Assembly: GCF_002571385.2 (NCBI RefSeq)
Contig: NW_019217911.1
Location: 521,399-585,398 of the forward strand
DNA length: 64,000 bases
Origin: Stylophora pistillata
Lineage: Eukaryota
Direction of reading: 5' to 3'
The notes below the pieces were generated by a model. It had not been told where the DNA came from, did not search any database, and worked only from the letters and a program-made list of their open reading frames with translations. This document shows positions 1 through 2,962 of the stretch, piece by piece. Position 1 is the first letter of the stretch. Every line of letters starts with the position of its first letter. The position numbers and the translations under genes were made by a program.

Positions 1-2962
1 CGTGCATATCTTCAATCACCTGAGTAATTACCGAGGTATACTTAATATTAATTTTAGTTTTCACGGGATCTCCTACCTCGCCAAACCCTCCTTCCCCAAG
101 TTTTTGAACCTTCACCAGGTACTTAAAATCACGATCATCAACACTCCAAAGACTTTCTACTCGAGGAATTTTGTCAGGATACATGGAAGTCTTCTCACCT
201 TTTCTTTTTCTACACATCTTTGCAAAGAGGAACATGAAAAAAAAAAAAAAACCTTCGATTTTTTTTGTTCATTGCGAGGAATTGTGATACGGGAAGAGTA
301 AGTTTTGCAAAGGAATGCTCGACATCGGAATGCTCAGCATTTAATACTGATAAATGCATCAGATATTACAGAAAATTAACCAATTAGAAGGCTTGCTAAA
401 TCATCTTTTCTAGACTAAGAGAAAAATAAAACTAAGTTAAGAGTACACGAAATTGTCCACGTCAAGCACCAATGCCAAGTTCAAATCTCGCTAGATTATA
501 TAACACGCGCAGCGCACGTGAATACGAAATATATATTAAGGGGGGAGAAGAAGATTGTAGTTTGAAATATTCTAATTTAAGATCATTTCAACATTGTATA
601 CGATTTACGTTCTTTGCTTATGGGCATTATCATAAAAGGTTAAAGATGGATCACAGATAAAATGAGAAAAATTCAAAACACTAAGGCTAAGAATCGTTAC
701 CCTTCGTTTGGTTCGGCGTTCCCTCCAAGCTTTCTGTAACAATCCAACTGCTCTGATCTGTCAGAAGAAAAGGAGCCGTCATATACTGACGAAGTTAAAT
801 TGTAAACCCATTTCCCTGATAAGGTCATGGAGTCGAAAGGGAACAAATAATGCCTTTTAAAAAGAACTTTTTCTTCTTGGATCAGATCTAGATTATAACT
901 AAAATCGCCCGATAGAGTTAAATGATCAAATTTGCCGACTAACTGTGTACCTATCGCCATTACTATCTCATACCTTGAGTTTGAGCTCTTCTCGTCTTTC
1001 TATTTTAAGTTTACGACGGCGAAATGCCTTTTGGATTCTCTCGGCGCATTTATTCTGCAAAGACAACAACAATTTTGATAACATCAACATACACATATTA
1101 GGATCTTAAAGTCGTCACGCCATGTTGAAGCACATAGTAATAAAGGTGTACTTTCTACGACAGGTCTCTTCTACAGTCACCCGCCTTCGACGGTCACCTC
1201 CGTACACTGGCTGCCTTCCTAAAGGTGACCACCTTTTCTCAGAAGAGCCACCTCTCTACACAGGACGCCTTGCCAAATCGGCCTCCTTCTTACAAAGGGC
1301 ACATCCTCACAATGGCACAGCAACTAAAGCGCGTCCTAAATGCATTGAAACTCTTCTCTCGCCAAGGGGTAAGAAACGCTAGAAATACTTATTTAGCTTC
1401 TGTACCTTGCTTGTTTAGTCTCGGTTAGGATGCTTTACAAAAGCATCAGTATTGCTTACGGTTATGGTGGTAAATGTAATGATATTCCACCATAAGCACT
1501 TTTGAAAAATTAGAAGTTGCACTGAGCCCGGTGGACATGGAGTGAAATATGTGACTCCCAATTTGAGGCGAGGGCGAATTTACCGTAAAGTACCCAAAAG
1601 AGTTGTTAATATGAACTTCTGAAACCCCCTTCCCTCTTAAATGCTTTTTATTAGTAATCCTACAATTTTTGCAGAACTGAACTTGCACGATAAACCTAAA
1701 CGACTTAATTCATCATATAACTCTTTATCAAAGTACTTTAAATTCAAATTCTTGTCTTTTGCGTATTAGTTTTGATTTGAATCTGCGCCAGGCCCGCTTA
1801 ATTATGGACGCGCTTTCATTCTGTAAAGACAAAAAGCATTTTGATATCAACAAATGATTTCAGCATCTAAAAGAATTAACGCTATTTTGAAGAACGTAAT
1901 AAAAGTATAAATTCTGCAGAACCTCTATGCTGAGGCTTCTACCTTACGAAGGTTACCATGAACTCTATATCAAAGTACCTTGAATTCAAGTTCTTCTCTT
2001 TTGCGCATTAGTTTTGACTTGAATTTCCACCACGCCCGCTGAATTATGGACGCGCTTTCATTCTGCAAAGACAAAAGCATTTTGATATCAACAAATGATA
2101 TAAGCATGTAAAAGAATTAACGTTATTTTGAGGAACCTAATAAAAGTCGAAATTCTGCAGAACCTCTATTGTAAGGCCTCTACCTTACGAAGGTTACCAT
2201 GGAACTCTATATCAAAGTACCTTGAATTCAAGTTCTTTTCTTTTGCGCATTAGTTTTGACTTGAGTTTCCACCACGCCCGTTGAATTATGGACGCGCTTT
2301 CATTCTGCAAAGACAAAAAGCATTTTGATATCAACAACTGATATCAACATCTTAAAGATGTTATTTTGAAGAACGTATTAAAGGTCTAAATTCTGTAGAA
2401 CTTCTCTGCTAAGGCTTCTACTGTACGGAGGTAAGCCGTAGAGTAGAAGGCTAAAAGGCTTAAAAAGGCTACCTCCGTACAACGGCCACTTTCTTACTGT
2501 GACTGCCTCTCTACAACGACCACCTCATCCACAATCGGCTATGTTTACACGGCATTATAAAGAAATCAGATTACCTGTCTTTGCAGCTCTCTATCTTTTT
2601 TACGGGCGTCGTTTTCAATACTAAAAAAATGTCACAGTGTTACAATGGTGATGACCAATAATTCTTTTAACTCAAGTTTGGCAAAAATATATCCTTGTTC
2701 TTTCCGTTTATTGAGTGCGCTAGACGTCCAATACCTTAAGCTTGGCTGAAACACGTTTTCTTGCCTTAAACTTTTGAATATTTACATTAACGTCTGGTAG
2801 CAAGGGAAACACTTTAACAGTTTCGTAAATGAAGTTGTAAAATCAGCTGGTAAAAGATTTCCATTCTTTACTTAAAAACTAGAAACTTCTATCGAAATTG
2901 GACTAAACGATAAAAGACTTACCTTTCTTCGCATTTGTTATCTGTAGTTGGCCATAAATATT
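1..2962 (-). CDS. Partial multi-exon protein kinase gene with five N-terminal IQ/IQ-like calmodulin-binding motifs; the 5' start was not found and the kinase domain continues past the left edge
   Basis: Hand-spliced minus-strand exons, all AG...GT and phase-compatible: 2962-2923 (YLWPTTDNKCEE), 2620-2575 (IENDARKKDRELQRQ), 2304-2221 (NESASIIQRAWWKLKSKLMRKRKELEFK), 2062-1979 (NESASIIQRAWWKFKSKLMRKREELEFK), 1820-1737 (NESASIIKRAWRRFKSKLIRKRQEFEFK), 1054-974 (NKCAERIQKAFRRRKLKIERREELKLK), 757-701 (IRAVGLLQKAWRERRTKRR), 217-77 (MCRKRKGEKTSMYPDKIPRVESLWSVDDRDFKYLVKVQKLGEGGFGE), and tentatively 19-1 (VIEDMH). GxGxxG kinase Gly-loop at the end. Confidence 0.72.
1720..2433. repeat. Three ~242-bp tandem units, each an 84-nt IQ exon plus flanking intron
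   Basis: Near-identical units start at ~1720, 1961 and 2203; exon donor edges at 1737, 1979 and 2221 (period exactly 242). A more diverged homologous unit lies at ~960-1200. Confidence 0.92.

What the first reader, a model, noticed from the sequence alone, without database searches (positions are those of the whole stretch)
1..2962. Hidden protein kinase with a five-IQ-motif array, one motif per exon
Seen: small minus-strand exons missed by the ORF track splice in frame with canonical AG/GT sites. They give IIQRAWWKLKSK, IIQRAWWKFKSK, IIKRAWRRFKSK, RIQKAFRRRKLK and LLQKAWRERRTKR, then ...VQKLGEGGFGE|V. Established: [ILV]QxxxRxxxx[RK] is the IQ calmodulin/EF-hand light-chain binding motif, and GxGxxG-V is the kinase subdomain I Gly-loop. 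Familiar IQ-plus-kinase proteins are arranged differently: myosin III puts its IQs after the motor domain, and CaMKs use a C-terminal non-IQ CaM site. Inference: a kinase with a myosin-neck-like poly-IQ arm (27-28 aa spacing) directly N-terminal to the catalytic domain, possibly a lineage-specific Ca2+/calmodulin-regulated kinase. I do not recognise this architecture. Only the start of the kinase domain is inside the window.
Basis: partly seen in the sequence, partly recalled or inferred. Interest (0 to 1): 0.85.

Follow-up and report, generated by a model that had tools for sequence, protein, structure and literature searches.

The report
Coral kinase with IQ-repeat arm
A real, expressed coral gene joins a row of small calmodulin-binding-type (IQ) exons directly to a protein kinase C-like enzyme, an unusual layout seen here only in Stylophora and Pocillopora; it is already in public gene catalogues under misleading names.

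Summary
Six minus-strand exons in window 77-2304 are all phase 0 with AG/GT borders, and they give exactly the quoted peptides.

RNA contigs confirm junction 701/217, which joins the last IQ exon to the Gly-loop exon. A second junction, 1979/1054, shows that exon C (1820-1737) is skipped.

The rest of the kinase lies left of the window, past a 1312-N run (AVK, HRD, DFG, APE, subdomains IX-XI, GFSF tail).

The genome is Stylophora pistillata. The gene is already modelled as XP_022789429.1 ("PKA catalytic subunit-like") and PFX26355.1 ("PKC delta type"), so it is misnamed, not hidden.

- **Conservation:** the Pocillopora verrucosa gene at the same Gemin6-linked position has seven IQ exons, one motif per exon. 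A Pocillopora transcript reads IQ exons in frame into a complete kinase.
- **IQ status:** a profile of 18 repeat units hits almost only calmodulin-binding IQ segments in the PDB. Pfam IQ passes for the paralog and ortholog but not for this gene. Only exons D and E fit the strict consensus.
- **Kinase type:** closest to PKC theta.

Calmodulin binding is inferred, not shown. I rate it a new variant of a known kind, of moderate interest. The scan had already noted the tandem exon duplication on this same stretch (s1-784528).

The parts
2923..3014 (-). Exon 1 of the public models. ATG at 3014-3012; codes MVFVTHWISLFTFASIAEYLWPTTDNKCEE plus two bases of a split Ser codon. The N-terminus is moderately hydrophobic.
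   Evidence: Exact mapping of XP_022789429.1 (P0154). The peptide is 90-97% conserved in two paralogs. No RNA contig covered it, so the true 5' end is uncertain.
2575..2620 (-). Exon 2, coding (S)IENDARKKDRELQRQ.
   Evidence: Mapping. Conserved at 80-93% in four paralog copies. Not covered by the RNA contigs.
2221..2304 (-). IQ exon A, 28 codons, phase 0: NESASIIQRAWWKLKSKLMRKRKELEFK. W replaces the consensus R at motif position 6.
   Evidence: PolyA RNA contigs cover 2221-2307 (L015 3920-4006).
1979..2062 (-). IQ exon B, 28 codons, phase 0: NESASIIQRAWWKFKSKLMRKREELEFK. 96% identical to exon A in DNA.
   Evidence: An RNA contig covers it and joins 1979 to 1054.
1737..1820 (-). IQ-like exon C, 28 codons: NESASIIKRAWRRFKSKLIRKRQEFEFK. 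Q is replaced by K, and the donor context is AAA|GT instead of AAG|GT. It is skipped in the observed transcript and in both public models.
   Evidence: for the sequence. The joint 1979/1054 skips it, and it is absent from P0154 and P0005.
974..1054 (-). IQ exon D, 27 codons: NKCAERIQKAFRRRKLKIERREELKLK. Canonical IQxxxRxxxxK.
   Evidence: 95% DNA identity to paralogs against about 87% for the surrounding sequence, introns included.
701..757 (-). IQ exon E, 19 codons: IRAVGLLQKAWRERRTKRR. Canonical LQxxxRxxxxK.
   Evidence: RNA contigs cover it and join 701 to 217.
77..217 (-). Linker plus start of the kinase: MCRKRKGEKTSMYPDKIPRVESLWSVDDRDFKYLVKVQKLGEGGFGE. It holds a basic RKRKGEKTS stretch and then the Gly-loop.
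   Evidence: Covered by RNA contigs (L015 1774-1917). 94-96% protein identity in paralogs.
1719..2432 (-). 242-bp tandem repeat, three copies. Each unit is one IQ exon plus its 158-bp intron.
   Evidence: Exon A against B is 96.4% identical and their introns 91.7%.

Best explanation
This is the 5' half of a real, expressed Stylophora pistillata gene (XP_022789429.1 / PFX26355.1).

**What it encodes.** Its product of roughly 470 residues has these parts, in order:
- a short N-terminus;
- one long helix made of four used IQ-type repeats, one per small phase-0 exon, plus a fifth repeat that is skipped;
- a very basic linker (RRTKRR-MCRKRKGEKTS);
- a complete AGC-group Ser/Thr kinase domain, closest to novel PKC delta/theta, but without C1 or C2 domains and with a shortened tail ending in a GFSF hydrophobic motif.

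**Where it occurs.** It belongs to a tandemly duplicated family seen only in Stylophora and Pocillopora. In this family the number of IQ exons changes by exon duplication and exon skipping.

**Most likely mechanism (inferred).** The IQ helix carries calmodulin or calmodulin-like light chains. It replaces the lipid-sensing regulatory half of a PKC, so that Ca2+-dependent binding or release of these light chains next to the catalytic domain controls the activity or location of the kinase. One possible route is exposure or masking of the basic linker, which resembles a basophilic substrate or pseudosubstrate site.

**Shown:** the exons, the splicing, expression, conservation, kinase integrity, the helical IQ-like repeats and purifying selection. 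**Inferred:** light-chain binding and regulation.
For: **Sequence and splicing.** Exons and peptides are as stated. RNA joints are at 701/217 and 1979/1054, and contigs cover exons A, B, E, the Gly-loop exon and the AVK exon.

**Rest of the kinase.** The remaining kinase exons are in L004. Pkinase scores 154.6 bits on P0154.

**Kinase type.** The best PDB matches are PKC theta at 141.9 bits for P0154 and 179.2 bits for P0011, followed by PKA and S6K.

**Conservation in Pocillopora.** The P. verrucosa gene has seven single-IQ phase-0 exons, the same kinase exon structure and Gemin6 downstream. Pocillopora transcript contig L020 is open from IQ exons into a complete 321-residue kinase.

**IQ character.**
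- Pfam IQ scores 26.3 bits on P0153 and 21.0 bits on paralog P0156, against a cut-off of 20.3.
- A profile of 18 repeat units, searched against all PDB chains at E up to 10, returned 20 hits. Nineteen are myosin IC, sodium-channel or KCNQ segments, known from established knowledge as CaM or light-chain-binding IQ sites. The best E-value is 0.0033.
- AlphaFold2 models residues 2-153 as one helix, with pLDDT 80-93 over residues 31-140.

**Selection.** dN/dS against two paralogs is 0.18 and 0.21. Exons are 95-99% identical, against about 87% for the surrounding sequence, introns included.
Against: - Pfam IQ gives no hit on this gene's own product, even at E up to 10, or on single exons.
- Three of the five repeats break the IQ consensus: R6W in A and B, Q2K in C.
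- Spacing of 19-28 residues differs from the 23-25 typical of myosin necks (established knowledge).
- The Lys/Arg/Glu-rich segments between motifs could form a stable single helix without any light chain.
- The complex prediction with calmodulin gave no answer, which counts neither way.
- RNA depth is low and the raw-read run showed no reads on the exons.
- Exons 1 and 2 have no RNA support here.
- About ten codons between the Gly-loop and AVK lie in an N run and cannot be read.
- Pfam Pkinase_C is not detected, so the AGC tail is degenerate.
Confidence: 0.6

Rival explanations
1. The gene is real, but the repeat arm does not bind calmodulin. It is a charged single alpha-helix or basic spacer that sets distance, binds acidic lipids or nucleic acid, or carries nuclear-localisation signals. 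The resemblance to IQ motifs is a remnant.
For: Pfam IQ does not hit this gene's product. A, B and C break the consensus. The inter-motif segments are rich in K, R and E, and AlphaFold2 models one uninterrupted helix without partners. Repeat length varies from 19 to 28 residues across relatives.
Against: The family profile retrieves almost only solved CaM or light-chain-binding IQ segments from the PDB. The ortholog and a paralog pass Pfam IQ. The core I-Q-x-A-W/F-R is the conserved part of the repeat, and the charged spacer is the variable part.
Confidence: 0.25
2. This copy is a decaying member of an unstable tandem cluster, a transcribed pseudogene. The IQ exons are being duplicated and degraded without function.
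For: The cluster at C128:400-460 kb is a mosaic of partial copies. Paralog IQ exons carry a hairpin insertion with a stop. A, B and C have lost consensus residues. Expression is low.
Against: All used exons of this copy are open and in phase, and all catalytic motifs are intact. dN/dS to paralogs is about 0.2. This copy's IQ exons lack the hairpin insertion. The layout is conserved and transcribed in Pocillopora.
Confidence: 0.1
3. The IQ exons and the kinase belong to two separate genes that were joined wrongly by gene predictors and by the first reader.
For: An N run interrupts the locus. Public models of the family are inconsistent: kinase-only models exist in Pocillopora, and one model is fused to Gemin6.
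Against: An RNA contig joins 701 to 217, where the downstream exon holds the Gly-loop. Spliced Pocillopora contig L020 runs from IQ exons through the whole kinase in one frame.
Confidence: 0.03

Closest known systems
Novel protein kinase C (delta/theta) catalytic domain, AGC group
   Same: It is the best match among solved structures: PKC theta at 179 bits for the Pocillopora kinase and 142 bits for this gene. Shared sequence features include DWWSFG, LPF..D...LF..I and a GFSF hydrophobic motif near the C-terminus.
   Different: No C1 or C2-like domain (Pfam; C1 regex). The tail is short, with no Pkinase_C hit. The margin over PKA and S6K is modest (10-25 bits). The GenBank name 'PKC delta type' describes the catalytic domain only.
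Myosin neck (lever arm) IQ arrays, such as myosin I and V
   Same: Tandem IQ-type repeats forming one long helix. The family profile's best PDB hit is the IQ region of myosin IC heavy chain.
   Different: There is no motor domain. Repeat length is 19-28 residues rather than 23-25. Several repeats lack the consensus R or Q. The arm leads into a kinase.
Myosin III (kinase, motor and IQ motifs in one chain)
   Same: One polypeptide with a Ser/Thr kinase and IQ motifs (described in PMC10801316).
   Different: In myosin III the kinase is at the N-terminus and the motor separates it from the IQ motifs. Here the IQ array directly precedes an AGC kinase and no motor exists.
CaM-dependent kinases (CaMKI/II/IV, MLCK, DAPK)
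   Same: The proposed logic is the same: a calmodulin site next to a catalytic domain gates activity.
   Different: Those kinases use a single non-IQ site that needs Ca2+, placed C-terminal to a CAMK-group domain and overlapping an autoinhibitory segment (established knowledge). Here there are several IQ-type sites, N-terminal to an AGC-group domain.
Entamoeba histolytica EhPHDK (AGC kinase with an IQ-like hinge)
   Same: An IQ-like segment just N-terminal to an AGC kinase core, reported to bind an EF-hand protein, EhCaBP1 (bioRxiv 10.1101/2025.10.24.684426).
   Different: It has one degenerate motif in a hinge after a PH domain, not an array of exon-encoded repeats, and it is in an unrelated lineage.
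Legionella SidJ (kinase-fold enzyme activated through an IQ helix)
   Same: A kinase-like fold whose activity depends on calmodulin gripping an IQ helix (PMC6858067).
   Different: It is a bacterial effector with a single C-terminal IQ, and it is a glutamylase rather than a protein kinase.

Membership tests
IQ calmodulin-binding motif (Pfam PF00612) | Score above the Pfam gathering cut-off (20.3 bits) | tested here: not met
   This gene's product P0154 gives no PF00612 hit at E up to 10, and neither do single exons. Relatives do pass: P0153 at 26.3 bits and P0156 at 21.0 bits.
IQ calmodulin-binding motif (Pfam PF00612) | Consensus [FILV]Qxxx[RK]xxxx[RK] | tested here: inconclusive
   Met by exons D and E. 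Not met by A and B (W at position 6) or C (K at position 2). The paralog and ortholog versions of the A-type repeat read IIQRAWRRFKSK or IIQRAWRRLKLK and do fit.
IQ calmodulin-binding motif (Pfam PF00612) | Similarity to experimentally solved IQ segments | tested here: met
   A profile of 18 units was searched against the PDB. Nineteen of the 20 hits at E up to 10 are myosin IC, Nav or KCNQ IQ segments, with a best E-value of 0.0033.
IQ calmodulin-binding motif (Pfam PF00612) | Binds calmodulin or an EF-hand light chain | not testable with these tools
   Complex prediction of residues 100-152 with a calmodulin (P0272) returned 'no answer'. This needs a binding assay.
Eukaryotic protein kinase (Pfam PF00069) | Pkinase profile match and catalytic motifs (GxGxxG, VAIK Lys, alpha-C Glu, HRD, DFG, APE) | tested here: met
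   154.6 bits on P0154. GEGGFGE is in the window. YAVK, [16 protein letters not shown], DFG and APE are in L004. About ten residues between the Gly-loop and AVK are hidden by N.
AGC kinase group | AGC C-terminal tail (Pfam Pkinase_C PF00433) with hydrophobic motif FxxF[ST][FY] | tested here: inconclusive
   There is no PF00433 hit. The tail has MSGFSF, which keeps GFSF but has M in place of the first F, and it is about half the usual length. The best PDB matches are all AGC kinases.
Protein kinase C (the GenBank name of this gene) | C1 (and C2 or C2-like) regulatory domains N-terminal to the kinase | tested here: not met
   No C1 or C2 appears in the Pfam scans of P0154, P0153 or P0005, and the C1 regex finds nothing. 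The N-terminal region consists of the IQ helix.
cAMP-dependent protein kinase catalytic subunit (the RefSeq name of this gene) | Closest similarity to PKA catalytic subunits | tested here: not met
   PKC theta outranks PKA in both PDB searches. PKA-like proteins in the protein search are 31-39% identical, with no orthology signal.
Myosin III | Myosin motor domain between the kinase and the IQ motifs | tested here: not met
   There is no myosin head hit in any Pfam scan, and the IQ exons abut the kinase exon.

The most novel reading that the evidence does not exclude
A coral-family-specific class of AGC kinases in which the lipid-sensing C1/C2 half of a novel-type PKC has been replaced by a calmodulin-loaded IQ lever of variable length. 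Exon duplication and exon skipping tune how many light chains sit on the arm. Ca2+-dependent light-chain movement on the last IQ unmasks a basic pseudosubstrate-like linker and switches the kinase on. This would be a new way of wiring Ca2+ to a PKC-type catalytic core, in a calcifying animal.
Probability: 0.3. Interest if true: 0.65.

Novelty: new variant of a known kind. Interest (0 to 1): 0.45.

Why it matters
Calmodulin-controlled kinases and IQ lever arms are both textbook items. I did not find an array of IQ repeats placed directly in front of a PKC-like catalytic domain in the papers or protein searches available here.

If the arm does carry calmodulin, this family would show how a kinase can swap its regulatory input from lipids to Ca2+/calmodulin by exon shuffling. 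It would also show how the number of regulatory sites can change quickly through duplication of symmetrical phase-0 exons.

The family is confined, as far as seen, to Stylophora and Pocillopora, both widely studied reef builders in which Ca2+ handling is central. It is small enough to express and test.

It also flags misleading automatic names ('PKC delta type', 'PKA catalytic subunit-like') and incomplete public models of these genes.

Tried and rejected
- **Pfam on single IQ exons**: only weak IQ_SCN5A_C hits (E 0.015-0.12) and no PF00612. This is uninformative for 19-28 residue pieces.
- **Complex prediction with calmodulin.** Complex prediction of IQ exons D+E (P0154 residues 100-152) with calmodulin P0272 gave 'no answer', score 0.00. 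It counts neither for nor against binding.
- **The protein-atlas search on P0153**: only generic kinase clusters. Nothing about the IQ plus kinase layout.
- **Protein search with the Pocillopora IQ region**: only family members. This search sees only proteins of 203-645 residues, so longer IQ proteins were not examined.
- **Search for the closest paralog in the genome.** I looked for a genuine PKC relative using P0011. Non-family hits were roughly 26-44% identical exon fragments or intronless kinases, so it gave no help on origin.
- **ARAGORN on the highly expressed repeat** at window 3000-4200 found no tRNA.
- Full-length analyses used public models returned by the tools (P0154, P0005, P0153, P0011). 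I did not fill the N run left of the window, so the roughly ten codons between GEGGFGE and AHYAVK remain unread.
- **Rejected idea: paralogs B2 and C as pseudogenes.** I had considered this because some kinase exons are missing from them. The missing parts coincide with N runs or a single N in those loci, so nothing can be concluded.
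Full report
**1. The observation**

- Exons 2304-2221, 2062-1979 and 1820-1737 are 84 bases each.
- Exon 1054-974 is 81 bases, 757-701 is 57 bases and 217-77 is 141 bases.
- Every exon is preceded by AG and followed by GT, and every length is divisible by three.
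- Frame 0 gives exactly the quoted peptides, ending in VQKLGEGGFGE.

The first three exons lie in a 242-bp tandem repeat with three copies (1719-2432). Each unit is one exon plus a 158-bp intron. Exons A and B are 96.4% identical and their introns 91.7%.

A relaxed IQ pattern finds only these five sites in all six frames of the window. The cluster is therefore not chance.

Only exons D and E fit the strict pattern. A and B have W at the position of the consensus R, and C has K for Q.

**2. The rest of the gene**

The window is G000:C128:521399-585398. Immediately to its left lie 1312 N (L004 8689-10000). I did not fill them.

Beyond the N run, the minus strand of L004 carries the remaining kinase exons:
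- ...AHYAVKTFLKRNVEHALMNLKETLILLRLVGNSSITLLCRAFTIS (8688-8552; its start is hidden by N)
- [16 protein letters not shown]... (8057-7959)
- ...YAVDIGQGLKYLYSKNVIHR (7702-7637)
- [43 protein letters not shown] (7261-7133)
- MIIGEPYTYSVDWWSFGVTLFQMLTGQ (6635-6555)
- LPFYDDEERNLFENIVYTTPDIPDWLGTEARDCLLK (6116-6009)
- LLRKCPAVRLGV...HPFF... (5682-5554)
- INPMSGFSFLLSDEEDVFMA (5123-5064)
- DDTSSD followed by the stop (4513-4496)

All catalytic signatures are present. Roughly ten codons between the Gly-loop and AVK cannot be read.

**3. RNA evidence**

I laid three polyA RNA-seq contig sets and one raw-read run on L015, whose coordinates equal window plus 1699.
- A joint with CT..AC ends, which is GT..AG on the minus strand, joins window 701 to 217. 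This is exactly the predicted link between IQ exon E and the Gly-loop exon.
- A second joint joins 1979 to 1054. Exon B is spliced straight to exon D and exon C is skipped.
- Contigs cover exon A (2221-2307), B, E, the Gly-loop exon and the AVK exon. The AVK contig stops at the exon's 3' (donor) end, L004 8552.
- Depth is low. The raw-read run gave no reads on the exons.
- Exons 1 and 2 were not covered.
- One contig retains 67 bases of intron upstream of exon A.

X2 and X3 gave identical figures on these gene exons, so they may be one data set filed twice and I count them as one source.

**4. Public models and identity of the genome**

A search with the DFG/APE exon against 1.84 billion representatives and a follow-up protein search returned models from this very contig (length 658,082), named as Stylophora pistillata.
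- P0154 = XP_022789429.1, 'cAMP-dependent protein kinase catalytic subunit-like', 424 residues.
- P0005 = PFX26355.1, 'Protein kinase C delta type', 358 residues.

Exact mapping shows that XP_022789429.1 uses exon 1 (3014-2923), exon 2 (2620-2575), IQ exons A, B, D and E, and the Gly-loop exon. It then jumps the N run and omits the AVK exon before continuing through the kinase.

So the gene is annotated. It is misnamed and incomplete, not hidden.

**5. Conservation**

The protein search found close relatives only in Stylophora pistillata, Pocillopora verrucosa and Pocillopora meandrina. Scores then drop to generic AGC kinases at about 39% identity. A search with the Pocillopora IQ region found only family members. 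Both searches see only a limited length range, so longer proteins such as true PKCs were excluded.

At the P. verrucosa locus L019, XP_066026348.1 maps onto seven small phase-0 exons, each with one IQ-type repeat of 19 or 22 residues. The Gly-loop, AVK and later exons that follow have the same structure as in Stylophora. Gemin6 lies just downstream in both genera.

Spliced Pocillopora contig L020 is open from its first base. It runs through ...WRKHRRTRR, IKATKLTQQAWRDYQTGRR, LKATKLIPKAWREYRTRRR and IRRKRKSQE into a complete 321-residue kinase.

Within S. pistillata the family forms an unstable cluster. C128:400-460 kb is a mosaic of whole and partial copies, and further copies lie on C180, C154 and C766.

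Against two paralogs, this gene's exons are 95-99% identical, while the surrounding sequence (introns included) is about 87%. Summed over exons, dN/dS is 0.18 and 0.21. This indicates purifying selection.

**6. What the parts are**

*Kinase.*
- Pkinase scores 154.6 bits on P0154.
- The best solved relatives are PKC theta, at 141.9 bits for P0154 and 179.2 bits for the complete Pocillopora kinase. Yeast PKA and S6K follow. The DFG/APE exon alone ranks PKA, RSK, SGK and S6K first.
- The tail keeps GFSF, as in the PKC delta/theta hydrophobic motif, but it is short and gives no Pkinase_C hit.
- No C1 or C2 domain exists.
- I therefore call it an orphan AGC kinase with a novel-PKC-like catalytic core.

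*Repeats.*
- Pfam IQ passes its cut-off on the Pocillopora ortholog (26.3 bits) and on a Stylophora paralog (21.0 bits), but gives nothing on this gene's product.
- An alignment of 18 repeat units from this gene, a paralog and Pocillopora has the core A-x-x-I-Q-x-A-W-R-R.
- Its profile, searched against all PDB chains at E up to 10, returned 20 hits. Nineteen are myosin IC, sodium-channel or KCNQ IQ segments, known as calmodulin or light-chain-binding sites. The best E-value is 0.0033.
- AlphaFold2 without an alignment models residues 2-153 of P0154 as one continuous helix, with pLDDT 80-93 over residues 31-140. The kinase part of that model is poor and was not used.

**7. Mechanism**

*Shown:* an expressed gene under selection, in which a helical array of IQ-type repeats abuts an intact AGC kinase.

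*Inferred:* the arm binds calmodulin or calmodulin-like light chains, and it takes the place of the regulatory half of a PKC.

The linker between the last IQ and the kinase is RRTKRR-MCRKRKGEKTS here and RRIRRKRKSQE in Pocillopora. It resembles a basophilic-kinase substrate or pseudosubstrate site. Light-chain movement on the adjacent IQ could gate it. This step is speculation, at about 0.2.

The symmetrical phase-0 exons explain how repeat number changes:
- four used plus one skipped here;
- seven in P. verrucosa;
- A and B duplicated very recently.

The complex prediction with calmodulin gave no answer and is not evidence either way.

**8. Comparison with known systems**

Papers found here describe the following:
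- a single IQ next to a RhoGEF in one Dictyostelium kinase (PMC1420674);
- an IQ-like hinge before the AGC kinase EhPHDK that binds EhCaBP1 (bioRxiv 10.1101/2025.10.24.684426);
- a C-terminal IQ helix that activates the kinase-fold enzyme SidJ (PMC6858067);
- myosin III, with a kinase, a motor and IQ motifs (PMC10801316, listed).

None has a poly-IQ array directly N-terminal to a kinase. Four literature searches found no described family of that kind. I could not query domain-architecture databases, so other lineages may hold similar layouts.

**9. Verdict**

- four IQ exons are used, not five;
- two of the five motifs are canonical;
- the gene is annotated, not hidden.

It is untested as to calmodulin.

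I rate it a new variant of a known kind, with interest 0.45.

Noticed in passing
window 6191-12302 (minus strand): The upstream neighbour is an LRRK2/ROCO-type gene. Large open exons carry COR-A, COR-B, a kinase domain and an LRRK2-type beta-propeller.
   Followed up: partly
window about 3268-3649 (L015 4967-5348): A short element between the two genes has very high depth in polyA RNA contigs, with summed word depth in the hundreds to thousands. It shows many loose ends and variant letters, as a dispersed repeat transcribed from many copies would. ARAGORN finds no tRNA there.
   Followed up: partly
L010:5718-5792 (C128:445718-445792); also C128:406697, 407233 and 408408: In several paralog copies the IQ exon is followed at once by its own reverse complement: a 37-nt hairpin, 86% complementary, with 1 nt between the arms. 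This adds 42 bases and an in-frame stop. The IQ exons of the gene in this window lack it.
   Followed up: partly
C128:400000-460000 (L006-L011): A mosaic of whole and partial copies of this gene and of its Gemin6-side flank. It includes runs of a 281-bp segment (equivalent to L004 1586-1866) repeated at 98-99% identity around 420-425 kb.
   Followed up: no
L004:2917-3294 (minus strand), about 1.2 kb beyond the gene's stop codon (L004 4496) and outside the window: A Gemin6 gene (Gemin6_C, 80.7 bits). The same neighbour follows the Pocillopora ortholog, and one P. meandrina public model wrongly fuses the two genes.
   Followed up: yes
window 2925-3014 (exon 1): The predicted N-terminus MVFVTHWISLFTFASIAEYLWP is moderately hydrophobic and 90-97% conserved in two paralogs, but it is unlike the Pocillopora model's N-terminus. 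It may be a membrane-associating segment, or the start of the gene may be mis-modelled.
   Followed up: partly
window 2221-2371: One low-depth RNA contig (depth 2.1) runs from exon A 67 bases into the upstream intron. It is either unspliced RNA or an alternative 5' end.
   Followed up: no
L004 8689-10000 (C128:520087-521398), directly left of window base 1: A 1312-base N run hides the intron after the Gly-loop exon and the first codons of the AVK exon. Both public models omit the AVK exon although it is transcribed.
   Followed up: yes
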